Shown: positions 1,275-56,216 of the stretch, piece by piece
Numbering within the stretch: the first letter of the stretch is position 1
How the letters are laid out: every line of letters starts with the position of its first letter
Virus record (IMG/VR): IMGVR_UViG_3300034073_003340
Location: 310,001 to 374,000 of that record
Reading direction: 5' to 3' (one strand)
Length of the DNA stretch: 64,000 nucleotides
Program-made: the position numbers and the translations under genes
Notes under the pieces: model-generated
Databases searched by the model: none
What the model was told of the DNA's origin: nothing
The model's input: only the letters and a program-made list of their open reading frames with translations

Positions 1275-1682
1275 TTATTTTGGATTGCGCATCATATCCA
1301 CTGCGCCGTCAACCTCATCTAAAACCTCGAAGCCATGCTTTTTATACCAAGCCACCAAAGCTTCAGTCGAGGTATCAGCATAACCATCGGCACTGAGTTT
1401 GATAGTCACGCCATGCTTGTCGGCGAGATCGCATATGGCGCGCAAAGCTTGGGTTCCGGAACCGGAGCCTGAGCCCTGTATATCACTTAAACGAATAGAG
1501 CTATTTCCTTGACCTCGGACTTCCACCTTGGCTGATCCAATAAGTCTCTGACGATGATTGAATGGACTCTCTTGTGAGATGCTATCAAGTTCATCAAGCA
1601 ACCTCTGAGTGGGAGAATCAGGATCAGGAGTGGTCTTCCCCAATTTTATGGTTAGCTCATTTGTGATTTCATTCCAGCGCAT
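1275..1682 (-). CDS. late protein with GNAT-like domain
   Basis: Start at MRWNEITNE after TAAATA; GSGTQALRAICDLAD...LVAWYKKHGF resembles a GNAT acetyl-CoA-binding motif. Confidence 0.55.
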   Translation of the reverse strand: MRWNEITNELTIKLGKTTPDPDSPTQRLLDELDSISQESPFNHRQRLIGSAKVEVRGQGNSSIRLSDIQGSGSGSGTQALRAICDLADKHGVTIKLSADGYADTSTEALVAWYKKHGFEVLDEVDGAVDMMRNPK

Positions 1683-1693
1683 GTTGTATTTAT

Positions 1694-1764
1694 TGGCGCT
1701 CCGAGTAGGATTCGAACCTACAATAGCAGTCTTAGGAGGACCGCTCCCATCCATTGGCCGGAGC
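1694..1764 (-). tRNA. tRNA-Arg(CCT), short D-arm
   Basis: Loop CT-CCT-AA, T-arm, CCA; only 71 nt. Confidence 0.8.
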
Positions 1765-2061
1765 ATCTTTCCAAGTCAACTTAAACAACATAGCGTCTTT
1801 GGGATCCACAAAGCTGAAGCCTCGACGATGATCATCTGTGTAAAGCTTATAGGTAAAATACTTGATCTTGCGCTCTTCCAGCCAGTTGATCAATATCATC
1901 CATATGGGAGGATCCGCATATGTGTCCAACACATCTATTTCCAACATAAAGGTGACCTGTAGTTTTTCCGCAAGATCACCTAGATTGGCACGATTGCGAT
2001 TGGCTCGTATTTTCATACGAGTGTGCATATAAGGATTATGTTTGAATGGGCCTTTGAACAT
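1732..2061 (-). CDS. small protein, DAxLFKLxW family
   Basis: ORF track; C-terminal FVDPKDAMLFKLTW; tail overlaps the tRNA-Arg gene. Confidence 0.7.
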   Translation of the reverse strand: MFKGPFKHNPYMHTRMKIRANRNRANLGDLAEKLQVTFMLEIDVLDTYADPPIWMILINWLEERKIKYFTYKLYTDDHRRGFSFVDPKDAMLFKLTWKDAPANGWERSS

Positions 2062-2066
2062 TCCTT

Positions 2067-2094
2067 ATTCTAACATAGAGTAGAGAAATGTCAA
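2067..2094 (-). promoter_or_regulatory. sigma70-like promoter
   Basis: TTGACA-N16-TAGAAT just upstream of ORF 2061. Confidence 0.5.
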
Positions 2095-2096
2095 CC

Positions 2097-2173
2097 TGGC
2101 GTCCTCGAGAGGATTCGAACCTCTGACCTGAAGATTAGAAGTCTCCTGCTCTATCCAGCTGAGCTACGAGGAC
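2097..2173 (-). tRNA. tRNA-Arg(TCT)
   Basis: Canonical cloverleaf, CT-TCT-AA, CCA. Confidence 0.95.
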
Positions 2174-2179
2174 ATCAAG

Positions 2180-2869
2180 TTATTTTCTTACGATGAATTC
2201 CTTGCTATTGCCGGAATTCGTAATCCACACTATTCGGTTACGATCAATTTCGCTAGAAAAAACTTCGGCCTTGTCCAAGATTTTTTGGTTATACTCTAGA
2301 GCCCATTTTCGATCACTCAAGAGATCTTTCTTCAGGTCGTCGCCATCTGTTATAAAGCTCTTTTTGGAATTATAGATATTGTAATATTCAGGGTGTTCCC
2401 GATTTCTCACATAATAGCGACCATCGACCTTTAAAAATCCAGACTCTTCGTATTTGGAAACCAGTTGATCGATTTCTTCTTCTGATTTGACTGGTTTTAA
2501 AAGCTCTCTCCAGTTACCCGACGTTCTCATACCAGCAAAATGTTCCGCTACCCTCTTGTCAGAGCTCCAGGATTCCAAGATACCCTTTTGCCAAGTGGTG
2601 TATGAACCATCCTTGATGATACCTCTGTAGAGTGAAACTTTAGGAGGCAATGATGCTCTCACAGGAGCAAAAGCTGCCTCAATCTCTTGAGCAATCTCAT
2701 CATTGGCCTTGATATGATTTACTAAATCACCTTCGGTCCAATTCACAGTTTCCCATAAATCAATAGCCGATTGAGCTTCACGACTAAGAGTCGAGTAAGC
2801 TTTCTTGGCCAGTCCAAACACATTGCTGATCGGGGCTTTTTCGAAGATTTCTTTGTAACGCATAGCCAT
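2180..2869 (-). CDS. ADP-ribosyltransferase-like late protein (R-S-E type)
   Basis: LYRG...SWSSD..VA..FA...KEFIV motifs; TATAAATA abuts the start; N-terminus MRYKEIFE. Confidence 0.6.
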   Translation of the reverse strand: MAMRYKEIFEKAPISNVFGLAKKAYSTLSREAQSAIDLWETVNWTEGDLVNHIKANDEIAQEIEAAFAPVRASLPPKVSLYRGIIKDGSYTTWQKGILESWSSDKRVAEHFAGMRTSGNWRELLKPVKSEEEIDQLVSKYEESGFLKVDGRYYVRNREHPEYYNIYNSKKSFITDGDDLKKDLLSDRKWALEYNQKILDKAEVFSSEIDRNRIVWITNSGNSKEFIVRK

Positions 2870-2894
2870 ATTTATAGGCTAGAAGCAAACGATA

Positions 2895-3593
2895 TCACGT
2901 ACCGACTACAAAAACATCAACAGTCGTGTTAGCGTTCACCATGTTAAAAGTGGTGAGCAGACCTGAAACGTTCTGAGATTTCACATAACCTCGAATAGAG
3001 GTATTGGATGATTCCTGTCTAGATACGCTTACAAAGCATGAGTCATTGGCATTGATTCCAGATGACGCGTTTGGTCTAGCATTGGCACCAACAAACAATA
3101 CTGTTGTAAAATTGGCAGATGATATATCACAAGTCCAAACACCGTTACTGGAGGCAACTGAACCTGTCCAGAATTTCACATTGGAATCTATTAGACCGCT
3201 TGATCCAAAAGGCGTAGAGTAGCCTTTTGGGCGTCCTATCACATTCCATTGTGAACCATTGTATACTAATGAAACACCGGAATAGTTAACATTGATTACC
3301 AAAGAGGATTCACCATCAATCAGTTTTCCGTTGCCCTGAATTGTGATGTTATGAACGGCCGCATTTCCGTTGCCGTCTTTTATCTTAATCATCTTTCCCG
3401 AAGATGGATCAGAGGGAAGATTGAGCACAGTGGGAGAATTTCTCGTCACCACTACCACTGAGTTGAGCATTGAAATCAAAGTAGGGGAAGTTGTCACGAT
3501 GGCAACATCAGCAAGAACGTTGGACAGATCAGCAAGAGCTTTTTCATCCAGTGTTTCTTCTAAATCTTTGATTTGCTTGATACGGACCTGCAC
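2895..3593 (-). CDS. putative virion structural or tail-fibre-like protein
   Basis: S/T/V/G/N-rich beta sequence; TITIxGNGxxIDG...LVYNGSQW-type module typical of fibre proteins. Confidence 0.5.
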   Translation of the reverse strand: MQVRIKQIKDLEETLDEKALADLSNVLADVAIVTTSPTLISMLNSVVVVTRNSPTVLNLPSDPSSGKMIKIKDGNGNAAVHNITIQGNGKLIDGESSLVINVNYSGVSLVYNGSQWNVIGRPKGYSTPFGSSGLIDSNVKFWTGSVASSNGVWTCDISSANFTTVLFVGANARPNASSGINANDSCFVSVSRQESSNTSIRGYVKSQNVSGLLTTFNMVNANTTVDVFVVGT

Positions 3594-3731
3594 CGTGTTT
3601 CCTCTATACTATAGGTGCGATATTTTGATTATCACACCAAGATAGAGTCAGGCTCCCAATATGTCAATATTAACCCTAGGTTAACCTATCCAAAGCTCGT
3701 CTTTTGACATATTATGTGATTTGAAAAGAAT

Positions 3732-3885
3732 AAGATCCAAGGCCGGATTCCACACCCCGGCTCCAACACGGTTACCGGGTTCTCTGCCCGGACCGTCAGC
3801 CCAACAAAGCAATCACTAGCCTTGGGGGTGAGGGCTCCGGAAACCCAACCTTATCCCAATATTCATTCATGCCTTCAAGGATCTT
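3732..3885 (-). ncRNA. unassigned structured RNA candidate
   Basis: Closed by AAGATCC/GGATCTT; shares GAATATTGGG and AAGGTTGGGT with 4406-4474. Confidence 0.4.
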
Positions 3886-3934
3886 GGTGCTTTCACTGAG
3901 AATCGAACTCAATTTGTAGCCAATCTACAGAAGC
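3885..3934 (-). pseudogene. 50-nt mini-tRNA (acceptor, one arm, T-arm, CCA)
   Basis: GCTTCTGTAG start is identical to tRNA-Ile at 13161; TTCGATT T-loop; ACCA end. Confidence 0.5.
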
Positions 3935-3981
3935 ATAGTCATGAGCAGGTGGGTCAGCTTTTCAACTGACCCACCGCATGA

Positions 3982-4068
3982 TTAGATAATCATGAACAGA
4001 TGGTTGAGGATGATTGAGATCAGATATCCCAGCATCGCTTCAACGATCACGCGAATAATACACGCCAT
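3982..4068 (-). CDS. 28-aa hydrophobic peptide
   Basis: AAGGAGG SD, MACIIRVIVEAMLGYLISIILNHLFMII*. Confidence 0.6.
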   Translation of the reverse strand: MACIIRVIVEAMLGYLISIILNHLFMII

Positions 4069-4115
4069 CTTAGCACCTCCTTGAGGTTGCTACATCCGTT
4101 AAAACCTAACAAGAA

Positions 4116-4148
4116 TCAACGGATGTAAATTGTTTTAACATACATCAT
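4116..4148 (-). CDS. 10-aa leader peptide (uORF)
   Basis: AAGGAG SD, MMYVKTIYIR*; the ORF end forms one arm of a 10-bp hairpin. Confidence 0.4.
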   Translation of the reverse strand: MMYVKTIYIR

Positions 4149-4319
4149 TGTTTTCTCCTTTTTTAGGCTTCGTGATGATCTAGAGGGTAAATTACCCTCT
4201 AAGGCACAACCACGAGTCGTGCTTAGCCTTCGCTATTAATGAGTTGTTAGCCCCAACATAGCTACGATGTTACCATCGATTTCTTATCATACACAACTAA
4301 CTTTGTTGTGTCTATATTC

Positions 4320-4401
4320 TGGTGCTGACGGTGGGACTCGAACCCACGATGTGGTATGAGGCCTTACGAAAGCCTTGGAATCGCCGCTATCCGACATCAG
4401 C
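4320..4401 (-). tRNA. tRNA-Thr(CGT)
   Basis: AGGCT-TTCGTAA-GGCCT arm, extended variable loop, CCA. Confidence 0.8.
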
Positions 4402-4405
4402 AGAT

Positions 4406-4474
4406 TAGGACCCAATATTCATAGCGTCCCCGCTTTAGATGGGAGTGACCCAACCTTGCCCGCTTGGGGCCTTA
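4406..4474 (-). ncRNA. unassigned small structured RNA candidate
   Basis: AGGCCCCAA/TTGGGTCCT closing stem; motifs shared with 3732-3885. Confidence 0.35.
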
Positions 4475-4477
4475 CCT

Positions 4478-4553
4478 TGGTGCCGGCACGAGGGATCGAA
4501 CCCCGGGCCTCAAGATTACAAATCTAGCGCTCTACCAACTGAGCTATACCGGC
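4478..4553 (-). tRNA. tRNA-Thr(TGT)
   Basis: Canonical, TT-TGT-AA, CCA. Confidence 0.92.
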
Positions 4554-4685
4554 ATGTGAGTGGTCCAATGTCTGTTGCCAGCACAGTCCCTTAGGGACTT
4601 CATTGGACCACTGATTTGTGTTTAACAAAAGTGGCCACCTTTGTCAAACTAAAACATTAGCCAGTACATCCGTGGTCTAATGTTT

Positions 4686-4756
4686 TGGAGCCCCAACTAG
4701 GATTCGAACCTAGCCTCCAGCGTTCGAAGCGCCGGGTCCCATCCATGGGCTGGGGC
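4686..4756 (-). tRNA. tRNA-Arg(TCG), short D-arm
   Basis: CGGCG-CTTCGAA-CGCTG arm, CCA, 71 nt. Confidence 0.82.
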
Positions 4757-4757
4757 A

Positions 4758-5054
4758 TTACGCCGGACAGCGATCAAAAACCAACTTGAACGCCATCGCA
4801 TGTCGTTTTTCCATGAACCAGATTTCCATCTGGTCACCTATACCTTCTTCTATTGGGGTATCAACCCAATAGTCGCCGCGTGGGCCAACCATTCTATTGA
4901 GCCATTCTTCAGTTTCTGGTTTCATCCAACGATGCCTAGTCAAGTATTGCTTGAGAGTCATTGTTGGATGATTTTTAAAAGGTTCATAGAATCGATCTGT
5001 TTCAGCTTCGGATAGTTCAAAAACGTATCCGCCTTCATCTTCATAAAGATTCAT
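4758..5054 (-). CDS. small protein, DAxLFKLxW family
   Basis: AGGAGG SD; C-terminal WFMEKRHAMAFKLVF. Confidence 0.75.
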   Translation of the reverse strand: MNLYEDEGGYVFELSEAETDRFYEPFKNHPTMTLKQYLTRHRWMKPETEEWLNRMVGPRGDYWVDTPIEEGIGDQMEIWFMEKRHAMAFKLVFDRCPA

Positions 5055-5105
5055 AAGTCACCTCCTACACCCAGATTATAACCAGGTGTAAGAGATGTCA
5101 ACACC

Positions 5106-5375
5106 TTACTTTTCAGAAAGTGGCTGAGTAGTGGCATATCGCAGCAAAGCGGTAATAATACCAACTACTGTCAGGATAACACCGCTATGCTCACCCATAA
5201 GGGCCTGCATCGAAGGCAAATAAATTTGAAGGGCGCCAAAAATAGTCAGTGCCGTTGAAAACCAAATCGTCTTAGACTTGGCCGCTTTGATTAGCCATGT
5301 CTTAGCGTTAATCCCCATTGCCTGAAGCATATCAAGATATGGGATAACATTTGGTTCTTTGCTTGGTTCAGTCAT
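5106..5375 (-). CDS. two-TM membrane protein, possibly holin-like
   Basis: Two hydrophobic segments, AAGGAG SD, TAAATA upstream. Confidence 0.5.
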   Translation of the reverse strand: MTEPSKEPNVIPYLDMLQAMGINAKTWLIKAAKSKTIWFSTALTIFGALQIYLPSMQALMGEHSGVILTVVGIITALLRYATTQPLSEK

Positions 5376-5418
5376 AGTCGATCTCCTTGTCAGAGTGTCG
5401 ACTATTTACCGCAATGGT

Positions 5419-5491
5419 ATATGGGCAAGTTGGTGGCCAGGGGCTTGGTTCAAAGTTTGAGTTTGATAACCCTGAGCCGTCCGGCCCATAT
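5419..5491 (-). ncRNA. Y-RNA-like element G (no tRNA module)
   Basis: ATATGGGC-CGG...GGGTTATC / CTTGCCCATAT. Confidence 0.7.
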
Positions 5492-5493
5492 TT

Positions 5494-5570
5494 TGGTTGC
5501 GGAGGACGGATTCGAACCGCCGACCTTTAGGTTATGAGCCTAACGAGCTACCAGGCTGCTCCACCCCGCG
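5494..5570 (-). tRNA. tRNA-fMet(CAT)
   Basis: C1:A72 mismatch, CT-CAT-AA, CCA. Confidence 0.92.
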
Positions 5571-5614
5571 TCAATACGATTAGCAAGAACTGTTTCTTGT
5601 GTCAATAATTTTTG

Positions 5615-5803
5615 TGGAGACGACGGGATTCGAACCCGCACGAAAAGCTGACCCAAGCATTACCAAGGGCTGGTGTGTAGGTTCAAAGACTCGTCGCGAG
5701 CCTATAAAAAATATCCCACACCATCTTACGCAACCTTTCAGGTTTTACCCTGAATCGCGGTCTTGTCTTTTGCGATTGCCTGTCCCTCTAGGCGGACGTC
5801 CCC
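5615..5803 (-). ncRNA. tmRNA-like or tRNA-Ala-like RNA with a ~115-nt internal domain
   Basis: Acceptor GGGGACG/CGTCTCC with G3:U70 and A73; T-arm GCGGG-TTCGAAT-CCCGT; no anticodon arm. Confidence 0.55.
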
Positions 5804-5829
5804 ATGTAGTGAATTTTTAGTCTACCAGG

Positions 5830-5902
5830 TACAGGGTGGGAGAATCGAACTCCCTTCTTCCGATTTTCAGCCGGCCGCATTGACCACAGTTGCTTACCCT
5901 GC
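5830..5902 (-). tRNA. tRNA-Phe(GAA)
   Basis: CT-GAA-AA loop; CCA not encoded. Confidence 0.85.
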
Positions 5903-5922
5903 ATGAGGGAGTAGACTCGCGC

Positions 5923-6291
5923 CTACTCCCCTTCGAACTTTGCCTTTAAGGCTTCGTAGAGCTTTCGCTCTTCGTCGTCCTTTTTCAGCTTCTTTGCGAG
6001 GGCGGTTGCTCGTCTCTTTTCAGCGGCAATCGCAGCTTTTGCCTTTTTGGCTTTCAGCTTTTCAATTCGCGTTTCATATTCATCATCCGTCTCCAGACGA
6101 TTACATGACAGACGAATTGTTACCTCACAATCATCATAATACCAGTTGGTTTCGACGTAGAGTTCTAAACCCTCGCCATACTGGGCTATGAGATCCGCCA
6201 GTTTGTAGGTTTCATGCGTGTTGAGGATTTCAACAGTATGTGATACATTCCGACGGGCAAGTTCTTTTTCGTTCAAATCAACCATATTCAC
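5923..6291 (-). CDS. hypothetical protein
   Basis: AGGAGG SD, basic coiled-coil C-terminus. Confidence 0.7.
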   Translation of the reverse strand: MNMVDLNEKELARRNVSHTVEILNTHETYKLADLIAQYGEGLELYVETNWYYDDCEVTIRLSCNRLETDDEYETRIEKLKAKKAKAAIAAEKRRATALAKKLKKDDEERKLYEALKAKFEGE

Positions 6292-6334
6292 CTCCTATTC
6301 CAACACAAAAGGATAGAGGTTTCCAAGGTATCAT

Positions 6335-6410
6335 TGGAGGCCCCAGTGGGAATCGAACCCACATAGATCCGCTTTGCAGGCGGTCACAATTCCCATTCTG
6401 TCATGGGGCC
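6335..6410 (-). tRNA. tRNA-Cys(GCA)
   Basis: CT-GCA-AA, U73, CCA. Confidence 0.88.
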
Positions 6411-6431
6411 ATGTTGCTGTTCAAAACAGCT

Positions 6432-6505
6432 TGGAGCGGGTGAAGGGAATCGAACCCTCGTCTTCAGCTTGGAAGGCTGTAATAATACCATTATACGACA
6501 CCCGC
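6432..6505 (-). tRNA. tRNA-Gly(TCC)
   Basis: CT-TCC-AA, U73, CCA. Confidence 0.92.
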
Positions 6506-6508
6506 GTG

Positions 6509-6670
6509 TCAGGTCTTCTTTGAGATGCCAAAACACCTGAGAAGCTTTGCCAAAAAGGGATGGCGCTCACTGAAGGTCAGCGGTCGAAACCAACAGTAAT
6601 CGTGAGCAATACCCTCACGAGTATCACAGCACCATTCTCCGTTTTCATCATAGTGATGATCTAGGTTCAT
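6509..6670 (-). CDS. small hypothetical protein
   Basis: Start MNLDHHYDENGEWCC after an AGAGG SD, lying between two tRNAs. Confidence 0.45.
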   Translation of the reverse strand: MNLDHHYDENGEWCCDTREGIAHDYCWFRPLTFSERHPFLAKLLRCFGISKKT

Positions 6671-6685
6671 CAAAGCCTCTTTGGT

Positions 6686-6763
6686 TGGAGCGGGTAACGG
6701 GAATCGAACCCGTCTCTTCACCATGGCAAGGTGACATAATCCAGACCAATATACTATACCCGC
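6686..6763 (-). tRNA. tRNA-Gly(GCC)
   Basis: TT-GCC-AT, U73, CCA. Confidence 0.9.
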
Positions 6764-6769
6764 GTGTTC

Positions 6770-6990
6770 AATCTTGAAGATCCGTAGCCGCGATCTTGTT
6801 CTATGCTACAATCTACCTACCTGAATATCACTATTCAAGTGCCTCGCCATTATGCGATGAGACCTTATTGGTCTCCGGCTGCGCCAACCCGACCATATAG
6901 CTGAAGGATTGCCATGGTCTGTTTGGCTTGCTGGCTTAATCACGGTGGTCTCTTCCCTTGTGCTGGTCTATTCGCCCAACTCCCACTCGT
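6770..6990 (-). ncRNA. rnpB: RNase P RNA, 3' piece
   Basis: P15 GCCAA/TTGGC with L15 GGU, P16 GACCAT/ATGGTC, P18 with GUGA loop, and the 3' strands of P2 (TGTAGC), P4 (TCGCGGCT) and P1 (CAAGATT). Confidence 0.8.
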
Positions 6991-7590
6991 TCACTTCTTA
7001 CGGTTTGTTTTTCTGGCCTTAATCAACTGAGAAGCTTTCTCTTTTCCGTGAATTTCTACTAGGGTTTTACCCTTTAGTTTGGCTCTGATATTATCTCCCC
7101 AACCCTCAGGGACCGTTCTCCCTTTAGACCACCCTTGCTTAGTCCAAGTATCAAGCTCATCCGACTTGATCTTTTTATTACCAAGTTCTGGATGAGTGAT
7201 CCATATAGATCCAAATTGGGTATTGTTAGAACCAACACCGACTTGTTTTAGTTGTCGGGTAGATTGTCTCTTCTTCTGAGCTTGTGGCGTTTGAGCAAAC
7301 TTTCGAGCAAATTCATACCCGCCGTCACCGCCCTTTGTCAAATTATAGGTATCAGTGCGGGCTACAAACTCTTCTGTAACGACCTCTTTCTCTTTCAGAT
7401 ACATTTCTGATCTTGAAGAAAAATTTTCTAGAACCTCCTTTTGAAAGTTCTCGATACCATACTTGGCAATAGCTGACTTGATAAGTTCTCCTGAACCCAT
7501 ATAGCCATCGTCTAAATCAGTAGTTGAATGAACCCCGATATAGATCTTGCCATTAATGAGATTGGTGATCTTGTAGAGTATGTAATTCAT
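6991..7590 (-). CDS. GIY-YIG homing endonuclease (Seg-like)
   Basis: YILYKITNLINGKIYIGVH...YMGSG...KYG.ENF.KEVLE...E...YN motifs; own TAAATA box. Confidence 0.9.
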   Translation of the reverse strand: MNYILYKITNLINGKIYIGVHSTTDLDDGYMGSGELIKSAIAKYGIENFQKEVLENFSSRSEMYLKEKEVVTEEFVARTDTYNLTKGGDGGYEFARKFAQTPQAQKKRQSTRQLKQVGVGSNNTQFGSIWITHPELGNKKIKSDELDTWTKQGWSKGRTVPEGWGDNIRAKLKGKTLVEIHGKEKASQLIKARKTNRKK

Positions 7591-7601
7591 ACTCTATTTA
7601 C

Positions 7602-7658
7602 CTCGTCGCGAACTTCCTCAAAAGCTTTCGCTCCTGCTGTAGCTCGACCTGCAAGATT
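7602..7658 (-). ncRNA. rnpB: RNase P RNA, 5' piece
   Basis: P1 AATCTTG, P2 GCTACA, P3 GGAGC-GAAA-GCTTT and CR-I-like GAGGAAGTTCGCGA, each pairing with the 3' piece. Confidence 0.8.
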
Positions 7659-7731
7659 GGTACGCCCACGAAGACTCGAACTCCGATAAACCGGTAATCG
7701 GCCGGTTGCCTTACCATTAGACGATGGGCGC
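7658..7731 (-). tRNA. tRNA-Ile(GAT), atypical C33
   Basis: ACCGG-CCGATTA-CCGGT arm, T-arm, CCA. Confidence 0.65.
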
Positions 7732-7735
7732 AAGC

Positions 7736-7919
7736 TTGATTCAAAAAGCGTGGCTTGGTTCCCCGTTTCAAGCACCACAAGCGACTCTATACCAATACTC
7801 CGCCGGAGCATTCAGTGCGCAACTCTGACTCTACCAGGTTCAAATCCTGGTCATAATATTCAGCAACCATACCCACGAGACCTTTGATGTCTGCGAAGGT
7901 ATCACGCTTTTTGAATCAA
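7736..7919. ncRNA. 184-nt region closed by a 17-bp inverted repeat
   Basis: TTGATTCAAAAAGCGTG/CACGCTTTTTGAATCAA. Confidence 0.4.
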
Positions 7920-7954
7920 TTGAATATAACAAAGGACATGGCCTTTGTCAACAT

Positions 7955-8028
7955 TGGAGCGGATAGGGAGAATCGAACTCCCCTAACTACGTTGGCAACG
8001 TAACGCATTACCACTATGCTATACCCGC
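7955..8028 (-). tRNA. tRNA-Gly(GCC)
   Basis: TT-GCC-AA, U73, CCA. Confidence 0.9.
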
Positions 8029-8195
8029 ATGGTATTTGCTGACCGGAACCTCTCGCCAACAGCGCAAGCTCACCACACTTCCGTGCCCGGCCATCTTGCC
8101 ATTTTTGCTCGACCGCTAGGTAGTCTGTGCCTCTAAAGGTTTCACATCCTACATCAGCAGATTTGTTCTAACAAATCGTAATCAATTTGTCAATC

Positions 8196-8274
8196 TGGGG
8201 TGACCGGCGGGAATTGAACCCAGCACCTTCGGCTTCACAGGCCGCTATCCACAAACCAGTAGACCACGGTCACC
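8196..8274 (-). tRNA. tRNA-His(GTG)
   Basis: G-1:C73, CT-GTG-AA, CCA. Confidence 0.9.
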
Positions 8275-8281
8275 ATACAGA

Positions 8282-8692
8282 TCAGAGGGCTTTGCCCGTC
8301 CTCGCATCAACAATTCTTACTCCTGGAAAAACTGCTAGGCTACCACTTTCTCCACCTTGGAAATAAGCGTCGTATCCTTTTGCTCGGAGTTCTCTAAAAA
8401 ACCCCGGTATCTTTTCCATTTCACCATAATACTCTTCTATTTCATCCTCTGTGGGATAGTAGATATTATGAACATCCAAATAGCAAGCATAGGTTTCGGC
8501 CAAATTGTCCCCGTAGATTTTCTCACCCCAAGTGGGCGAATCAGAGAACCATAAACCAGCATCTGGTATCTTGAACTTGGTAATATTCTTGGTATTACTA
8601 CCATGATACATGACGCTCTTGACCTTGGAGCCAGAGAACGGATTTGGAACAAACTGCTCCGAATCTTCACCAATGATTTGTTTCCATCGCAT
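8282..8692 (-). CDS. ADP-ribosyltransferase-like late protein
   Basis: MYHGS...F...GLWFSDSP..(IY)G motifs; TAAATA-N4-ATG; N-terminus MRWKQIIGE. Confidence 0.55.
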   Translation of the reverse strand: MRWKQIIGEDSEQFVPNPFSGSKVKSVMYHGSNTKNITKFKIPDAGLWFSDSPTWGEKIYGDNLAETYACYLDVHNIYYPTEDEIEEYYGEMEKIPGFFRELRAKGYDAYFQGGESGSLAVFPGVRIVDARTGKAL

Positions 8693-8705
8693 TGAATATT
8701 TATTC

Positions 8706-8793
8706 TGCTGAGCGCGGAGTCGAACCGCCTACCGTTTATGGCATCGCCCATCACTTCTTATTGATTCGTACTGGCCCGGCCAGCTACTCAGCA
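8706..8793 (-). pseudogene. tRNA-like RNA without a recognisable anticodon arm
   Basis: TGCTGAG/CTCAGCA acceptor and GGCGG-TTCGACT-CCGC T-arm. Confidence 0.5.
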
Positions 8794-8870
8794 TGGCCCT
8801 CTGGACGGGACTCGAACCCGCCTCGACCCGGCGTGACAAGCCAGCGGCGTCACCCGACGCCTCCCAGAGG
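8794..8870 (-). tRNA. tRNA-Asp(GTC)
   Basis: CTGGC-TTGTCAC-GCCGG arm, G73, CCA. Confidence 0.9.
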
Positions 8871-8924
8871 ATATGGTTTTCTGCTCTCAGAATGTCACGC
8901 CTAGTTTCAGCGGCGTTCCCTCGG

Positions 8925-8997
8925 TGGAGACTAGGGGGATCGAACCCCTGACCTACGCAATGCCATCGCGTCGCTCTCCCAGCTGAGCTAAGTCCCC
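8925..8997 (-). tRNA. tRNA-Ala(GGC)
   Basis: G3:U70, AT-GGC-AT loop. Confidence 0.9.
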
Positions 8998-9007
8998 ATG
9001 GGAGGGG

Positions 9008-9632
9008 TCACAAGGACCCCTTGGCTAGGATCAGTCTTTCTAGACCAATTGCCCAGCCAACACCTTCGGCGTATCTACCGCCTCCAGCGATTTGTTTTTG
9101 CGCGCCAAGCTGCTCGCATACGCCTTCGAATCCATCCTCTATATAATAGGATAATCCGCGTTTTACAGCGTCATTGAGCTGCCACTCGACCCCTTGAGAG
9201 TCAATACAGCGTCGCAGTAGCTCAACAACTTCGTCGCGGTCCTCAGGGCCCTGTGAGCCCAGATACTCTACGCCAAATTGTATGAACTCCCGATACCGGC
9301 CTGCTTGTGGGCGCTCGTATCGGTAACAACGACTCACATAGAAGATCTTTAGTGTCTTTTCTGTGTGTCGCCATTTTTCTCGCCAGAGCTCTTGGATGAG
9401 CCCGGTGACTTCGGGAATCAAGCAAACATCTCGACCTCCCTTATCCTGGAAGGCCCACATTTGATTGATTATCTCTGGACCGGCTTTGTCGATGAAAGTC
9501 TGTTGTTCCCATATTGCGGGCAGAATAACCTCGTTGAAACCAGCTTCAGTGAACCAACCCCCTCAAGGAGTTGATTACATTGGTCATTTCACGGGCGTCG
9601 TCGCCCATGAGGACCCTTGTTCCCCTTAGCAT
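9008..9632 (-). CDS. hisS: histidyl-tRNA synthetase catalytic core only, frameshifted at a G5 run (9558-9562)
   Basis: MLRGTRVL, then after the shift GFNEVILP (motif 1), CYRYERPQAGRYREF (motif 2) and GGGRY...AIGLERL (motif 3); no anticodon-binding domain. Confidence 0.75.
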
Positions 9633-9668
9633 AAATCACCTCTTGTTTTCAGCGACCCTAATGGTCGT

Positions 9669-9742
9669 TGGATGCCCCTCTAGGGATCGAACCTAGGTTA
9701 CAACATTCAAAGTGTCGTGTCTTACCATTAGACGAAGGGGCA
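9669..9742 (-). tRNA. tRNA-Gln(TTG)
   Basis: CT-TTG-AA, CCA. Confidence 0.9.
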
Positions 9743-9753
9743 ATGTAGAGACC

Positions 9754-9813
9754 TGAGCAAGTTGATGCGGCGAGGGGTTCATCACCAAAAGATAACCCTC
9801 ATGCTTCGGCTCA
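9754..9813 (-). ncRNA. Y-RNA-like element C (no tRNA module)
   Basis: TGAGC-CGA-AGCATGAGGG-TTATC...CCCTCG...CAACTTGCTCA. Confidence 0.7.
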
Positions 9814-9819
9814 AATCTA

Positions 9820-9895
9820 TGGCTCCGGAGGAGGGACTCGAACCCCCAACATCCTCGTTAACAGCGAGGCGCATCTACCATTGAGCTACTCCGGA
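9820..9895 (-). tRNA. tRNA-Asn(GTT)
   Basis: CT-GTT-AA, G73, CCA. Confidence 0.92.
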
Positions 9896-9899
9896 ATGA

Positions 9900-10015
9900 A
9901 TATGAGCAAGTTTTGTAAAGGACTTTCCCAGTTGCCTGGGGTGATGGATTTGAACCATCTAGTTTTGATTTGAAGTCAAAAGTTTTTCCGATAACCCTTT
10001 ACTATCGGCTCATAT
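9900..10015 (-). ncRNA. Y-RNA-like element D with a TCA anticodon arm, T-arm and loop-closed acceptor
   Basis: ATATGAGC-CGA...GGGTTATC / CTTGCTCATAT; TTTTGA-CTTCAAA-TCAAAA arm. Confidence 0.75.
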
Positions 10016-10088
10016 GGCGCCCTCGGGAGGATTCGAACCTACCTCATCTTCCCTTCGCAGGGGAAGTGCATGATCCACATGCGAGGGC
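10015..10088 (-). tRNA. tRNA-Arg(GCG), short D-arm
   Basis: TTCCC-CTGCGAA-GGGAA arm, CCA. Confidence 0.8.
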
Positions 10089-10093
10089 ATTAG

Positions 10094-10165
10094 TAGTCCC
10101 GTGGTGACTCGAACACCAATCCGCCCTTTATGAGAGGGTGGCACTAACCTTTGTGCTACAGGACC
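10094..10165 (-). tRNA. tRNA with CAT anticodon (Met or Ile2)
   Basis: CT-CAT-AA loop with paired position 1. Confidence 0.8.
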
Positions 10166-10168
10166 ATA

Positions 10169-10244
10169 TGGTGAACCGGGCGGGACTCGAACCCGCGACC
10201 AGCTGATTAAAAGTCAGCTGCTCTACCGACTGAGCTACCGGTCC
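10169..10244 (-). tRNA. tRNA-Lys(TTT)
   Basis: Canonical, CT-TTT-AA, CCA. Confidence 0.95.
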
Positions 10245-10300
10245 ACTCCAGCTCTCTTTAGCTAAAGATTTCCGTTAGTCAAAGATTTTTCTTACACCAA

Positions 10301-10753
10301 CTACTTTAAAATCACCGGTATGTTCATTTTCTTAGCCAGATCTTCAACCTGGTCTCGAAAATATTCATCATCGTCCTGTCCACCTTCGTCTCTTATCCAT
10401 ATCTCCTTGACTGTAGAGGAGTTTATTGGATAAAGAGGTGATGGTTCTATCACCGTTTCATCTTCGGGACGGGTCCCCAAAATGATTCGGACTTCATCCC
10501 AACGATCAACCACTTGCGTTTCAAAACCCTTGGGGGCTTTTAGCACAAATGTCACATTGGCTGAATTCTTTACACCACCAGAGAACCAAAGATTGGGATC
10601 AGTAGTGGTTGAAACAAAATATTCAACATTGCGATCATGGTCGATGTCGTCATAGCTGGTATGGATGCCACCGTCTCTTAATATTGAAAGGGCAGGCCTC
10701 ATATCAGTAGCATGATACAAAACACCGCCAGTCAAGACTTCATATAACCGCAT
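10301..10753 (-). CDS. ART-fold-like late protein
   Basis: LYHAT...SIL..GG...FVSTTTDP...DEVRI; TAAATA-N5-ATG; N-terminus MRLYEVL. Confidence 0.5.
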   Translation of the reverse strand: MRLYEVLTGGVLYHATDMRPALSILRDGGIHTSYDDIDHDRNVEYFVSTTTDPNLWFSGGVKNSANVTFVLKAPKGFETQVVDRWDEVRIILGTRPEDETVIEPSPLYPINSSTVKEIWIRDEGGQDDDEYFRDQVEDLAKKMNIPVILK

Positions 10754-10765
10754 ATCTGTATTTAT

Positions 10766-10841
10766 TGGTGGGAGCCGTGGGGATTGAACCCACCTCGTTC
10801 TGCTTGTAAAACAGATGTCATCACCAGATGGCTAGACTCCC
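10766..10841 (-). tRNA. tRNA-Val(TAC)
   Basis: TT-TAC-AA, CCA. Confidence 0.88.
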
Positions 10842-10842
10842 A

Positions 10843-10917
10843 TGGTAGTCGGTGAGGGTTTCGAACCCCCGACCCTCTCGGTGTAAACGAGATGCTCTAC
10901 CACTGAGCTAACCGACC
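10843..10917 (-). tRNA. tRNA-Val(TAC)
   Basis: TT-TAC-AC, CCA. Confidence 0.92.
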
Positions 10918-10957
10918 ATGTTATCAACATAAACAATCCTATTTGGAATGTCAATAT

Positions 10958-11040: not shown

Positions 11041-11054
11041 ATATTTGTAATCAG

Positions 11055-53797: not shown

Positions 53798-53887
53798 TCT
53801 GACCTCAGAGTAAACAGGGGATGTCTGATATTTAGTAGGTGTCTATCCATGCTCTGATACTAAGTCCTTGATGTTGAAATCGCATTA

Positions 53888-55168
53888 TTAAAGTCCAGGT
53901 CTAGGATTCTGCATAGCAATCGCTACCTGGACAATATCATTCACGATGTCTGGATTCATTTCTAGAACCTCTATGATAAGATCCTTGGGATCCTTGCCGT
54001 CATCCTGATCATGCCTTTCAGGCTTCCATTCGTTTATTGCCTGTTGTTGAGCAATGAGATCTTTTTCCCAGTCACTCAAAAGCTGACGGTCGTCGTTTAG
54101 TCTAGCTTCCATTTCCAATAATTGCTTATGGGCAATTCCAAGTGCTTCTTGATCCGCCATAATCTGAGATTTTGCTTTTTCCAGGTTTGAATTCTCTTCA
54201 GCAATGACGTTTGACATTTCTAAAATAGAAGCTTCCAGCTCTTCTTTTTCTTGGAGTATTTTACGCTTGGCATCCTCCAAAGCAAATTCATCCAATCCGT
54301 CTGATTCAAGAACAGTCTCTTCAGTTATTGGACTATTCTCAATGGTTTCATTTGGTAGTATACCATTTGAGTCAAAAGAATTCTTTGGTGATTCTTCACC
54401 ACTTTCTTCAGCAAGGATCACATGATCCTTGGATCGCCTTTCCTGATAATCCTTGAGAGAGATACTTCCGGCAATGAAGAGCGAAAGGGCCAACGGATCA
54501 AAAGCTATCATGATGATTACGATAATGATACGAACTGCTGCCTCTGGGTCCCAACCAAACAGCTCTGCTACATATTTTACTGGACCTAGCTTTGCTTCAA
54601 CTTCAGCACCTTGTGTTTTCAAAGGAACTAGTTTGGTGTTGAGGTCATTTATGGCAGAATTATTGGCATCAATTTTCTCTTGGATCTTGGCCGACTCTTG
54701 TCTTTGGGAATTTGCCGCACGGAGACCTGCGCGTCCACTGGATTCAAGACTTCTATCGGTAATTCGGCTGATTTGATCCAAACGTGATTGAAGCTGGTCG
54801 TTTTCTGTTTGTTTCTGCTTCAGCTGGGTTTCAAGCTGAGCTACTTGGATATTGATACCAGCCACCGGGGCATTTTGTTCTAGGTGCCCCTTGCTCAGAT
54901 ATCCATATATGCCAAGACTGGTTATAGCCATTAGAGCGGCAATGAAGACGCAAAACAGACCACGAAAATACCACGGAGCTCTAGGGTTTCTCCAATTAGC
55001 ATGAACCCACTTCGTTGCTACGATCTTTCCGACCTCTAATGTACCAGTCATAACAACCACTCCCCAGAAGGTGGCAGCAAACAATGCGCCCATGCCGACC
55101 AAGGAGAAATAAGCGGCAACGCTAGAAATTGCGGCCGCGATGAAGAAGATTAGAAAAATGAATGCCAT
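53888..55168 (-). CDS. membrane-anchored coiled-coil protein
   Basis: N-terminal TM segments, FDPLA motif, long coiled coil. Confidence 0.75.
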   Translation of the reverse strand: MAFIFLIFFIAAAISSVAAYFSLVGMGALFAATFWGVVVMTGTLEVGKIVATKWVHANWRNPRAPWYFRGLFCVFIAALMAITSLGIYGYLSKGHLEQNAPVAGINIQVAQLETQLKQKQTENDQLQSRLDQISRITDRSLESSGRAGLRAANSQRQESAKIQEKIDANNSAINDLNTKLVPLKTQGAEVEAKLGPVKYVAELFGWDPEAAVRIIIVIIMIAFDPLALSLFIAGSISLKDYQERRSKDHVILAEESGEESPKNSFDSNGILPNETIENSPITEETVLESDGLDEFALEDAKRKILQEKEELEASILEMSNVIAEENSNLEKAKSQIMADQEALGIAHKQLLEMEARLNDDRQLLSDWEKDLIAQQQAINEWKPERHDQDDGKDPKDLIIEVLEMNPDIVNDIVQVAIAMQNPRPGL

Positions 55169-55252
55169 GTTTTGCCTCTGAGATATCTGATAGTGATACG
55201 GACCGCAACCGCGGACTGTCTACTTATCACTATCAGATATTATCAGGGTAGT

Positions 55253-55717
55253 TTATACACGCTTGCTCAAGAGACGCTTGAACAAACCAATGAAGCGATT
55301 ACCTAAACATTCAAGTTGAGTTTTGATAGAAGGATCTCGCTGAGGCGTGATATCAGTCAGGCCGTTATAACGATCCAAGAATTTCCAAGAAATATCCTTG
55401 GCTCCGAAAACCTCAAGAGCCTTGAATGCCATTTCTGGATCTAGGTCGCTACAGGTGTAGATGTCAAATTCAATAAAAGGCTGCTCGCACTCATCCCAAG
55501 TATGTAGGACCATATGAGATGTTGTGATGAGAACCATCGCGGTCATTCCGCGATTTCCAACCTGTTCACAATATTCAGCAGAAGCCTCTTTGAGAACTTC
55601 CATATTCATTGCGTGAACGATGTCAGTAAGCCACTGTTCGACCATTCGCTCATCCTTTTTCAAGGGCGGACGATCAACAGCGGCGTGAACAATCAGGTGC
55701 TTGTGAAGCTTTGCCAT
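55253..55717 (-). CDS. speD: S-adenosylmethionine decarboxylase proenzyme-like protein
   Basis: GMTAMVLITTSHMVLHTW.E...DIYTC; TSH in place of the usual ESH. Confidence 0.75.
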   Translation of the reverse strand: MAKLHKHLIVHAAVDRPPLKKDERMVEQWLTDIVHAMNMEVLKEASAEYCEQVGNRGMTAMVLITTSHMVLHTWDECEQPFIEFDIYTCSDLDPEMAFKALEVFGAKDISWKFLDRYNGLTDITPQRDPSIKTQLECLGNRFIGLFKRLLSKRV

Positions 55718-55802
55718 TTTATCTCCTAATCAAAAGATCGCGCTCTGCGATAAGCGTGTCTCGGGAAGATTAGGAAATCCGCTTCTTCCTCCGTAGCACT
55801 GT

Positions 55803-56216
55803 TTAGAAAAACTTTGCCGTAGCGGTGATATTTATCGGACTAGAGATCTTCTCATATCCTCGACTGGCTATGAGGTCATTGGACTTTACTGGCTTGAATC
55901 CAGCGTCACGATCCAACGACCAAGTGATATGAAAAGTCTTACCGTCTGGTCGAACGGTTGTTCCGTCCACCTCTACAACCAGGGCTTCAATACCCAAGGG
56001 ATCACAAGCATAACCAACCACCTTAAAAGTAGAAGCCTCGGGTAATGGCTGATCGCTCTTGACTCCCATCTTATACGTGATGTGATGACCAATGAACTCA
56101 GGGAACTTGGGAGGGAAAATGCTGGCAAGGTGTGAGCGACTTTGGTCACTGACTTCGAACGCCTGGTAGCCCCCGCGAGGCTTAGGCGCACTTTCCAAGA
56201 TGTCTTTTGCTCTCAT
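55803..56216 (-). CDS. 2H phosphoesterase-like protein
   Basis: Two HxT motifs (HHITY, FHITW); start MRAKDILES. Confidence 0.65.
   Translation of the reverse strand: MRAKDILESAPKPRGGYQAFEVSDQSRSHLASIFPPKFPEFIGHHITYKMGVKSDQPLPEASTFKVVGYACDPLGIEALVVEVDGTTVRPDGKTFHITWSLDRDAGFKPVKSNDLIASRGYEKISSPINITATAKFF

What the first reader, a model, noticed from the sequence alone, without database searches (positions are those of the whole stretch)
1275..56216. Shared N-terminal peptide plus TAAATA boxes marks probable capsid cargo on leaderless mRNAs
Seen: MRWNEITNE (1682), MRYKEIFE (2863), MRWKQIIGE (8692), MRLYEVL (10753), MRIREFLPE (18481), MRRYLKLFE (within 22035), MRLWELN (26073), MRAREFLFE (35213) and MRAKDILE (56216). 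In five of these TAAATA lies 4-5 nt before the ATG with no SD. Established: TATAAATA is the T4 late promoter, and T4 internal proteins have N-terminal capsid-targeting peptides cut after Glu. Inference: unrelated enzyme domains (ART-like, GNAT-like, 2H) are tagged for packaging and injection, and many are translated leaderless.
Basis: partly seen in the sequence, partly recalled or inferred. Interest (0 to 1): 0.62.

Follow-up and report, generated by a model that had tools for sequence, protein, structure and literature searches.

The report
Capsid-targeting tag and leaderless late genes
A 436-kb T4-related giant phage puts a short shared N-terminal peptide, much like the T4 capsid-targeting sequence, on about 15 unrelated late proteins, and half of these genes sit 4-5 bases behind a late-promoter box, so their mRNAs probably start at the AUG; this lets likely virion cargo be read from sequence alone.

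Summary
All nine N-termini exist. Six of them, not five, have TAAATA 4-5 nt before the ATG and no Shine-Dalgarno. The window is part of a 435,856-bp IMG/VR phage with a T4-type capsid protein, prohead protease, portal and gp55-type late sigma factor. Its nearest cultured kin are Sinorhizobium phage Phosso and Agrobacterium phage Atu_ph07.

TAAATA is the most enriched word upstream of genes. It precedes tail sheath, fibre and portal genes at 18-40 nt with an SD, and 14 genes at exactly 4-5 nt without one. Orthologs in four related contigs keep that spacing while the spacer letters differ.

The tag M-[RK]-x-x-[EDQ]-[ILVF], usually followed by [LIVMF]-x-E, heads about 15 otherwise unrelated proteins here and a similar set in each relative. 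It resembles T4 IPII/IPIII MKTYQEFIAE.

In Atu_ph07, 19 of 21 tagged proteins map to the published virion proteome. An untagged homolog of the tagged 2H protein does not.

Best reading: a T4-like capsid-targeting propeptide combined with leaderless late transcripts. Cleavage, injection and transcript starts remain untested. I rate it a new variant of a known kind.

The parts
1275..1682 (-). Tagged CDS, 135 aa, MRWNEITNE; weak GNAT-like domain that also matches an internal part of a 3925-position phage giant-protein family
1687..1692 (-). TAAATA late-promoter box, 4 nt before the ATG at 1682; it abuts the 3' end of a low-scoring tRNA-like sequence (1694-1775)
2180..2863 (-). Tagged CDS, 227 aa, MRYKEIFE (I-F-E); function unknown
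2869..2874 (-). TAAATA box, 5 nt before the ATG at 2863; the in-frame ATG at 2869 overlaps the box and should lie upstream of the transcript start
8282..8692 (-). Tagged CDS, 136 aa, MRWKQIIGE (I-G-E); ART-PolyVal-like ADP-ribosyltransferase (26.6 bits, cut-off 31.2)
8697..8702 (-). TAAATA box, 4 nt before the ATG at 8692; abuts a tRNA-like sequence (8705-8793)
10301..10753 (-). Tagged CDS, 150 aa, MRLYEVL; DarT/PARP-like ADP-ribosyltransferase fold as a lead only
10759..10764 (-). TAAATA box, 5 nt before the ATG at 10753; directly follows the CCA end of tRNA-Val (10766-10841)
18481..18648 (+). Tagged small CDS, 55 aa, MRIREFLPE (L-P-E); orthologs in G003 and G004 keep tag and box
18471..18476 (+). 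TAAATA box, 4 nt before the ATG at 18481
22035..23378 (+). CDS, 447 aa, MTDANN-MRRYLKLFE (L-F-E); tag 6 residues in; weak phiKZ internal-head-protein hit; the Atu_ph07 homolog gp475 is in the virion proteome
22005..22010 (+). TAAATA box, 24 nt before the ATG at 22035, followed by an AGGAGG SD (leadered late class)
26073..26777 (+). Tagged CDS, 234 aa, MRLWELN; DUF6934; Atu_ph07 proteins with this domain (gp53, gp483) are in the virion proteome
26062..26067 (+). TAAATA box, 5 nt before the ATG at 26073
34767..35213 (-). Tagged CDS, 148 aa, GTG start, MRAREFLFE (L-F-E); orthologs in G003 and G004 keep the tag
35243..35248 (-). TAAATA box, 29 nt before the GTG at 35213, with an SD (leadered late class)
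55803..56216 (-). Tagged CDS, 137 aa, MRAKDILE (I-L-E); 2H-phosphoesterase-like with two invariant HxT motifs; GGAGG SD, no box; an outgroup homolog lacks the first 15 residues
6991..7590 (-). Untagged GIY-YIG-type endonuclease gene inside the tRNA array with box (7595-7600) + 4 nt + ATG: shows the leaderless layout is not limited to tagged genes
18620..19057 (-). Untagged zinc-ribbon-like gene with box (19062-19067) + 4 nt + ATG; three orthologs in related contigs keep the 4-5 nt spacing with other spacer letters
484..16031 (-). Array of 50 tRNA genes with sigma-70-like promoters, in which four tagged leaderless genes and the endonuclease gene are embedded

Best explanation
Two linked devices of a T4-related giant phage.

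(1) The capsid-targeting tag. A roughly 9-residue N-terminal peptide, M-[RK]-(W/L/Y)-x-[E/D/Q]-[I/L/F/V], is usually followed within a few residues by [LIVMF]-x-Glu. It is the local form of the T4 capsid-targeting sequence. It would bind late-made proteins to the scaffolding core of the prohead, so that unrelated enzymes are enclosed in the head. These include ADP-ribosyltransferase-like and 2H-phosphodiesterase-like proteins and many of unknown function. The gp21-type prohead protease would then cut after the Glu. The mature proteins would leave with the DNA at the next infection, which suits counter-defence or takeover enzymes.

(2) The leaderless late promoter. [C/A]TAAATA is the gp55-type late promoter. 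In T4 the box lies at -13 to -6. A box 4-5 nt before an ATG therefore puts the transcript start on or next to the A of the start codon, giving a leaderless mRNA.

Because these genes lack an SD and sit inside tRNA operons read from sigma-70-type promoters, read-through RNA should not be translated. Only the late-initiated RNA exposes a 5'-terminal AUG. This would limit synthesis to the time when proheads assemble.

Shown here: the motifs, their statistics, their conservation, the T4-type machinery, and virion presence of tagged proteins in a relative. Inferred: binding to the core, cleavage, injection, the transcript 5' ends and the timing logic.
For: Machinery. Peptidase_S77 prohead protease (E 3.5e-25) and gp23 capsid protein (E 2.4e-81); portal; gp55-type sigma factor (phrog_12791, E 5.6e-93).

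Tag.
- About 15 gene starts against 2 of 2111 internal Met.
- The proteins are unrelated beyond the tag.
- 68 tags in five genomes show R/K at position 2, W/L/Y at 3, E/D/Q at 5 and I/L at 6. [LIVMF]-x-E ends at residues 7-14 in 49 of 68, against 13% of other N-termini.
- T4 IPII/IPIII start MKTYQEFIAE and IPI MKTFKEFTST. In T4, residues 4 and 7 target and residues 8 and 10 direct processing (PMC9026906).
- Orthologs keep the tag while the linker behind it varies. An outgroup homolog of the 2H protein starts without it.

Link to the head.
- The 88-aa gene after the portal, at the T4 gp67/68 position, carries the tag in all relatives, and tag-like N-termini (MKLTELFNPLTE, MKINDIITE) occur at that position in Atu_ph07 and PA5oct. 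There the proteins were found by MS.
- The capsid protein has a conserved ...PLME|TASAG junction. A 63-aa tagged protein copies it (68% identity over 19 residues, E 5e-6).

Virion presence. Atu_ph07 tagged proteins map to 19 of 21 entries of the published virion proteome, by mass to 0.01 kDa and by gene order. Fisher p = 5e-13, or 8e-7 with the gp54-63 paralog cluster counted once. The untagged Atu_ph07 2H homolog is not listed.

Late promoter.
- TAAATA words are about 10-fold enriched upstream of genes.
- Leadered boxes precede tail sheath, fibre, minor tail and portal genes.
- 13 of 15 tagged genes have a box within 60 nt (p = 4e-11).

Leaderless layout.
- 14 genes sit at 4-5 nt. 13 of 14 lack an SD-like word by the scan; the one exception (317590) has it upstream of the box. 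13 of 14 start with ATG.
- Box position is -13 to -6 in T4 and -12 in Aeh1 (PMC1524935).
- Orthologs in G001-G005 keep the 4-5 nt spacing with different spacer letters.
- T4 itself has no such genes.

Sigma-70-like promoters and no strong terminators lie in the tRNA array. T4 reaches late-only translation of e, I-TevI and segB through hairpins (PMC3014915).
Against: - No RNA run holds this phage, so no transcript 5' end is known.
- No proteome exists for this phage. The Atu_ph07 stock was PEG-purified, and its list also holds RecA-like, SSB and reductase proteins, so some entries may be carry-over.
- Ten of the 19 Atu_ph07 hits are paralogs of one cluster. They could be structural parts such as whiskers rather than internal cargo.
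- Atu_ph07 gp475, the homolog of the 22035 protein, is in the virion without a tag.
- A tag-like leaderless PA5oct gene (EST35_0271) is not flagged as MS-detected.
- Two window tags (10753, 26073) have Glu only at position 5.
- With a 4-nt spacer, the T4 rule puts +1 on the T of ATG unless the start shifts by one base.
- T4 gp45 found no homolog by tblastn, and gp33 was not sought.
- Three boxes abut tRNA 3' ends, so tRNA processing could make the mRNA ends instead.
Confidence: 0.62

Rival explanations
1. The tag is an assembly or anchoring motif for virion structural proteins in general. It might attach proteins to external whiskers, decoration sites or the tail. It would not be a cleaved propeptide that loads internal, injected cargo.
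For: Atu_ph07 is a 'hairy' phage. Its tagged gp54-63 proteins are about 30 kDa paralogs of unknown role that are abundant in virions. No data show cleavage or an internal location.
Against: - Tagged proteins include small enzymes (ART-PolyVal-like, 2H-like), which are unlikely surface parts.
- The tag ends in the protease-type [LI]-x-E.
- It sits on the protein at the position of the T4 core proteins gp67/68.
- One tagged protein copies the capsid maturation junction.
- It is close to the T4 capsid-targeting sequence.
Confidence: 0.15
2. The TAAATA next to the ATG does not act as a promoter there. The genes are read from upstream promoters. The A/U-rich box would serve as an SD-independent ribosome landing site, or the mRNA 5' end would be made by tRNA 3' processing, leaving an 11-nt leader.
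For: Three boxes directly follow tRNA or tRNA-like 3' ends. Sigma-70-like promoters lie upstream in the array. No start sites have been mapped.
Against: - The same word at 18-40 nt precedes SD-led structural genes.
- The 4-5 nt spacing is exact and conserved in orthologs that are not next to tRNAs.
- The spacing equals the T4 box-to-start distance.
- Almost all other genes in the genome use strong AAGGAG-type SDs.
Confidence: 0.15
3. The shared N-terminus serves another purpose. It might be a degradation or unfoldase tag (the phage encodes ClpX- and ClpP-like proteins), or codons that favour translation initiation.
For: A ClpX-like late gene lies in the window at 52544-53797. Half of the tagged genes are leaderless, so early codons could matter.
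Against: - The Arg codon is synonymously varied, and tags occur equally on SD-led genes.
- Tagged proteins accumulate in Atu_ph07 virions rather than being degraded.
Confidence: 0.05
4. Chance, or a paralogous family that merely shares an N-terminal helix.
For: The motif is short.
Against: About 15 observed against about 1 expected. There is no similarity beyond residue 9 or so. The tag is conserved in orthologs across five genomes.
Confidence: 0.01

Closest known systems
T4 capsid-targeting sequence on internal proteins IPI, IPII, IPIII and on Alt (Mullaney and Black 1996; reviewed in PMC9026906, PMC3012670, PMC5694885)
   Same: - A roughly 10-residue N-terminal peptide on otherwise unrelated proteins.
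- M-K/R, then an aromatic residue, then Glu, then a hydrophobic residue, ending in [LI]-x-Glu (T4: MKTYQEFIAE).
- A T4-type protease and core.
- Cargo includes an ADP-ribosyltransferase, as Alt is.
- The genes flank the tRNA cluster, which holds a GIY-YIG endonuclease gene, as in T4.
   Different: - The consensus is one residue shorter and prefers Arg-Trp.
- About 15 bearers per genome instead of four.
- The bearers are scattered, and many lie inside the tRNA array.
- Half are expressed from a leaderless late promoter.
- Packaging, cleavage and sufficiency of the peptide are untested here.
T4-type late promoters read by gp55 (TATAAATA at -13 to -6; CTAAATA in Aeh1; PMC1524935, PMC2988020)
   Same: The same core word, a gp55-type sigma factor in the genome, and position upstream of structural genes.
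   Different: Here a second class places the box 4-5 nt from the start codon. T4 has no such genes.
Late-only translation of T4 e, soc, 49, I-TevI and segB by hairpins that hide the ribosome site in early read-through RNA (PMC3014915)
   Same: Genes lying in early transcription units are translated only from transcripts that start at a late promoter just upstream. One example in each phage is a homing endonuclease.
   Different: The proposed device is absence of any leader and SD, not a hairpin. This is inferred, not shown.
phiKZ, 201phi2-1 and SPN3US ejection and inner-body proteins processed by the prohead protease (PMC5694885)
   Same: Many head-internal proteins are cut after Glu by a protease related to gp21.
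   Different: Those propeptides are mostly over 100 residues, and the motif is A/S/G-x-E. The phage lineage differs (own RNA polymerases, nucleus).
Polyvalent proteins of phages and conjugative elements (Iyer et al. 2017, cited in PMC7824862)
   Same: The same kinds of domains (ART-PolyVal, GNAT-like) are thought to be delivered with the DNA. One tagged protein matches an internal part of a 3925-position giant-protein family.
   Different: Here the domains are separate small proteins, each with its own tag, not beads on one giant protein.

Membership tests
T4-type capsid-targeting sequence system | Short shared peptide at the extreme N-terminus of otherwise unrelated proteins | tested here: met
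T4-type capsid-targeting sequence system | Hydrophobic or aromatic targeting residues, and a [LI]-x-Glu processing site at the end of the peptide | tested here: met
   49 of 68 tags against 13% of controls. Two window tags have Glu only at position 5.
T4-type capsid-targeting sequence system | gp21-type prohead protease and gp23-type head in the same genome | tested here: met
T4-type capsid-targeting sequence system | Late expression of the bearers | tested here: met
   By promoter motif only: 13 of 15 have a TAAATA box within 60 nt. There are no expression data.
T4-type capsid-targeting sequence system | Bearers are physically present in virions | tested here: met
   Only in the relative Atu_ph07: 19 of 21 are in the published ESI-MS/MS list. 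For this phage itself it cannot be tested.
T4-type capsid-targeting sequence system | The peptide is removed by the prohead protease | not testable with these tools
The published table gives no peptide positions.
T4-type capsid-targeting sequence system | The peptide alone suffices to package a foreign protein; the cargo is injected | not testable with these tools
   Needs experiments.
gp55-dependent late promoter | gp55-type sigma factor encoded | tested here: met
   phrog_234 E 2.4e-23; phrog_12791 E 5.6e-93
gp55-dependent late promoter | Conserved (T)ATAAATA-type box upstream of structural genes | tested here: met
gp55-dependent late promoter | Co-activators gp33 and the sliding clamp gp45 | tested here: inconclusive
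   T4 gp45 gave no tblastn hit at E 0.01. gp33 was not searched.
Leaderless mRNA | Transcript 5' end at the A of the start codon | not testable with these tools
   No RNA run holds this phage.
Leaderless mRNA | No SD, and an AUG start codon | tested here: met
   13 of 14 have no SD-like word by the scan; the exception (317590) has it upstream of the box, outside the predicted transcript. 13 of 14 start with ATG.
ART-PolyVal (PF18760), gene 8282-8692 | Pfam score over the gathering cut-off | tested here: not met
   26.6 bits against 31.2, E 1.1e-5. It is ART-like, but not filed as a member.
2H phosphoesterase, gene 55803-56216 | Two HxT/S motifs on a 2H fold | tested here: inconclusive
   Both HxT motifs are invariant in 7 homologs. 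The model has pLDDT 73.5. Most of the best fold matches are 2H enzymes (CNPase, phage phosphodiesterase, Acb1), but at E 0.04 or weaker.
GNAT acetyltransferase, gene 1275-1682 | Pfam GNAT score over the cut-off | tested here: not met
   16 bits against 27

The most novel reading that the evidence does not exclude
Box, ATG and tag together form a minimal, portable module of about 40 nt that turns any acquired gene into a late-made, head-packaged, injected effector. Leaving out leader and SD is a general timing device that silences such genes in early read-through RNA. If so, the tag would give a sequence-only read-out of the injected counter-defence arsenal across the Atu_ph07-like giant phages.
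Probability: 0.3. Interest if true: 0.75.

Novelty: new variant of a known kind. Interest (0 to 1): 0.6.

Why it matters
Giant phages carry hundreds of genes of unknown role. A short tag that marks head cargo would sort out, from sequence alone, which proteins travel with the DNA and act first in the next host. Examples are ADP-ribosyltransferase-like and cyclic-nucleotide-phosphodiesterase-like counter-defence candidates.

The tag could also serve as a packaging handle in phages of Rhizobiales.

A promoter fused to the start codon would be a compact way to restrict translation to late transcripts. It differs from the hairpin device of T4 and can be tested with a single 5'-end mapping experiment in the cultured relatives.

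Tried and rejected
- Megablast of 32 kb of the window against GenBank phages gave only tRNA matches.
- tblastn with T4 gp55, gp45, gp22, gp24, gp67, gp68 and the three internal proteins found nothing. gp55 needed profile searches.
- No RNA run exists for the stretch, only DNA contigs from subsurface, soil and other metagenomes. Read laying was therefore not used, because contigs cannot show starts.
No verdict.
- AlphaFold2 of 10301-10753 from a single sequence failed (pLDDT 36.6). The ART call for that gene rests only on Atlas leads.
- The 2H-like protein against T4 57B, and against PDB sequences, gave nothing significant.
- The window ART against Atu_ph07 gp381 gave only E 0.012 around the YHGS motif.
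- A strict tag pattern in PA5oct gave one hit. That gene is not flagged as MS-detected.
- The idea that the leaderless cassettes are recent DNA duplicates was rejected. Boxes, spacers and codons differ between them.
- The large protein searches were not used. Family scans and related contigs answered the questions.
- Only genetic code 11 was used.


Full report
WHAT THE WINDOW IS. The window is bases 310,001-374,000 of a single 435,856-bp IMG/VR virus record with terminal repeats and 46% G+C. The record encodes several T4-type functions:
- a gp23 major capsid protein (E 2.4e-81) and a Peptidase_S77 (gp21) prohead protease (E 3.5e-25);
- a portal protein and a DNA polymerase;
- a gp55-type late sigma factor (phrog_234 E 2.4e-23; phrog_12791 E 5.6e-93).

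By capsid protein, the nearest cultured phages are Sinorhizobium phage Phosso (87%), Agrobacterium phage Atu_ph07 (70%) and Pseudomonas phage PA5oct (67%). The first 16 kb of the window hold 50 tRNA genes on the minus strand.

THE OBSERVATION. TAAATA lies 4 nt (1682, 8692, 18481) or 5 nt (2863, 10753, 26073) before the ATG in six of them, not five, and none of those six has an SD. The other three differ:
- 35213 starts with GTG and has an SD, with a box 29 nt upstream.
- The 22053 motif is codon 7 of an ORF that starts at 22035, behind AGGAGG and a box 24 nt upstream.
- 56216 has GGAGG and no box.

Genome-wide the motif MR..[ED][ILVFM] heads about 15 genes, six of them outside the window. It follows only 2 of 2111 internal methionines. 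The proteins share nothing beyond the first nine or so residues. The Arg codon is CGC, CGT, CGA, CGG or AGA, so the peptide, not the DNA, is conserved.

THE BOX IS THE LATE PROMOTER. Words containing TAAATA are the most enriched 7-mers in the 80 nt upstream of genes, about 10-fold. SD words and TTGACA come next. ATAAATA occurs 40 times in the genome, and 35 of these lie outside same-strand genes.

The distance from box to start codon is bimodal:
- 14 genes at 4-5 nt, essentially without an SD (one has an SD-like word upstream of the box), 13 of them with ATG;
- almost nothing at 6-17 nt;
- a broad class at 18-40 nt with an SD.

The leadered class includes the portal gene, two tail-sheath genes, four fibre or tail genes and a minor tail gene. 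T4 late promoters are TATAAATA at -13 to -6, and Aeh1 uses CTAAATA from -12 (PMC1524935). In T4, genes 22 and 24 have the box about 28 nt before the ATG.

With the last A at -6, a 5-nt spacer puts +1 on the A of ATG. A 4-nt spacer needs a shift of one base.

CONSERVATION OF THE LEADERLESS LAYOUT. Five related IMG/VR contigs (G001-G005, up to 465 kb) have 28 matches to TAAATA-N4-5-ATG, against 6 for the reversed control. Most head conserved ORFs. Orthologs of the G000 genes at 19057, 18481, 394274, 293179, 15562, 216399 and 103826 keep the 4-5 nt spacing, while the spacer letters differ.

The peak at 4-5 nt recurs in G004, and more weakly in G003 and Phosso. It is not clear in Atu_ph07. It is absent from T4, where the two matches head ORFs of 6 and 12 codons.

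No RNA run holds this phage. The transcript starts therefore remain an inference from spacing and conservation.

THE TAG. In five genomes I collected 68 tags. Position 2 is R (48) or K (20). Position 3 is W, L or Y. Position 5 is E, D or Q. Position 6 is I or L.

A [LIVMF]-x-E ends at residues 7-14 in 49 of the 68, against 13% of other N-termini.

T4 IPII and IPIII start MKTYQEFIAE, and IPI starts MKTFKEFTST. In T4, residues 4 and 7 direct targeting and residues 8 and 10 direct processing (PMC9026906). With one residue removed, these map onto W3, I6, position 7 and E9 of MRWKEIVTE.

Orthologs in the relatives keep the tag. For the 2H-like protein, five relatives have M-[RK]-A-x-[ED]-[IFV] followed by a variable linker. 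A more distant homolog starts directly at the domain.

In the AlphaFold model the tag is a short, low-confidence helix before a disordered linker.

LINKS TO THE HEAD.
- The 88-aa gene right after the portal gene, at the position of the T4 core genes 67 and 68, begins MRYREFSKITE. Its counterparts begin MRYNEFSKE in Phosso, MR[YF]LEILRE in G003 and G004, MKLTELFNPLTE in Atu_ph07 and MKINDIITE in PA5oct. The last two were detected in virions by MS.
- A scaffold-like neighbour begins MKTVDLNKVLE.
- The capsid protein has a conserved ...NPLME|TASAG junction, placed like the T4 LTE|AEI site.
- A 63-aa tagged protein (MRWSEIVGKPILE|TASSG...) matches that junction at 68% identity over 19 residues, E 5e-6.
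- 13 of the 15 tagged genes have a late box within 60 nt (p = 4e-11).

EXPERIMENTAL SUPPORT FROM A RELATIVE. Atu_ph07 has 21 clear tags of the form M-[RK]-W-x-[QED]-L-x-E, among them a run of about a dozen genes at 41.8-50.6 kb.

The published ESI-MS/MS list of 131 virion proteins (Attai et al. 2018, PMC6102473, Table S5) contains 19 of the 21. I matched them by mass to 0.01 kDa and by rising gene number along the genome. This gives p = 5e-13, or 8e-7 if the paralog cluster counts once.

Matched entries include:
- gp561, the homolog of G000 164393;
- gp381, which is ART-like with a YHGS motif;
- gp53 and gp483, which carry the DUF6934 domain of the 26073 protein.

The Atu_ph07 homolog of the 2H-like protein has no tag and is not in the list.

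Caveats:
- The stock was PEG-purified, and the list holds some replication proteins.
- gp475, the homolog of the 22035 protein, is present without a tag.
- The one tag-like leaderless PA5oct gene is not flagged as MS-detected.

THE CARGO.
- 8282-8692 is ART-PolyVal-like (E 1.1e-5, below the cut-off).
- 10301-10753 has DarT/PARP-like leads only. My own model failed.
- 55803-56216 has two invariant HxT motifs. Most of its best fold matches are 2H enzymes (CNPase, a phage phosphodiesterase, Acb1), though weak.
- 1275-1682 has a weak GNAT signal. It also matches an internal stretch of a 3925-position giant-protein family.
- 26073-26777 is DUF6934.
- 22035-23378 has a weak phiKZ internal-head-protein hit.
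- The rest are unknown.

WHY LEADERLESS. Four tagged genes and a GIY-YIG endonuclease gene sit inside the tRNA array. Three of the boxes directly abut a tRNA or tRNA-like 3' end. The array has several strong sigma-70-like promoters and no strong terminators on that strand.

These genes are therefore also on early read-through RNA, where an internal AUG without an SD should stay silent. A late start at the AUG would make them translatable.

T4 solves the same problem for e, soc, 49, I-TevI and segB with hairpins that hide the ribosome site in early RNA (PMC3014915). In T4 the internal-protein genes also flank the tRNA cluster, which holds SegB. This timing logic is my inference.

COMPARISON AND NOVELTY. 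The kind is known: the T4 capsid-targeting sequence and gp55 late promoters. Neither a search for papers combining capsid-targeting, jumbo and prohead-protease terms nor a term search of the jumbo-phage review PMC7824862 turned up a description of the tag in the Atu_ph07-like lineage.

What differs here:
- the consensus;
- the number and variety of bearers;
- their placement in the tRNA array;
- the fusion of late promoter and start codon, which T4 lacks.

I rate it a new variant of a known kind, with interest 0.6 and confidence 0.62 in the combined explanation. The main rivals are a general virion-assembly anchor (0.15) and a role for the box next to the ATG that is not a promoter (0.15).

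Noticed in passing
window 58242-61984 (+); also the end of gene 1732-2061 (-): Tandem array of about ten small ORFs (66-121 aa). Each ends in a shared C-terminal peptide, roughly (D/E)AM(L/I)FKL(T/R/S)W, that overlaps the next ORF's start. The same motif precedes small genes in G003 and G004.
   Followed up: no
G000:C1:411178-411369 (L049:179-370, minus strand): A 63-aa tagged protein whose residues 9-27 copy the capsid protein's predicted maturation junction and mature N-terminus (68% identity, E 5e-6). It is conserved in G004, and the C-terminal part of Atu_ph07 gp53 resembles it.
   Followed up: partly
window 6991-7590 (-): GIY-YIG-type endonuclease gene inside the tRNA array, with a late box 4 nt before its ATG. 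It parallels T4 SegB in the T4 tRNA cluster.
   Followed up: partly
window 1694-1775 and 8705-8793 (-): Low-scoring tRNA-like sequences directly upstream of two boxes. They are found only with relaxed ARAGORN settings (Arg-CCT; an odd anticodon loop), not by default ARAGORN or Rfam.
   Followed up: partly
window 4621-4759 and 5612-5803 (-): Weak Rfam matches below the gathering score: alphaproteobacterial sRNA ar35 (E 0.0036) and a tmRNA-like stretch (22 bits).
   Followed up: no
window 52544-53797 (-): Gene with a ClpX-like zinc-finger N-terminus and a late box 31 nt upstream.
   Followed up: no
L167 (Atu_ph07 39484-51377): Run of about a dozen adjacent genes (gp53-gp63), mostly about 30 kDa paralogs. 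Nearly all start M[RK]W.[QD]L.E, and all are in the published virion proteome.
   Followed up: yes
L004:11953-12411 (T4 gene 57B): T4 57B starts MMEFKDFSTG, which looks like the neighbouring IPI start MKTFKEFTST. Whether 57B is packaged was not looked into.
   Followed up: no
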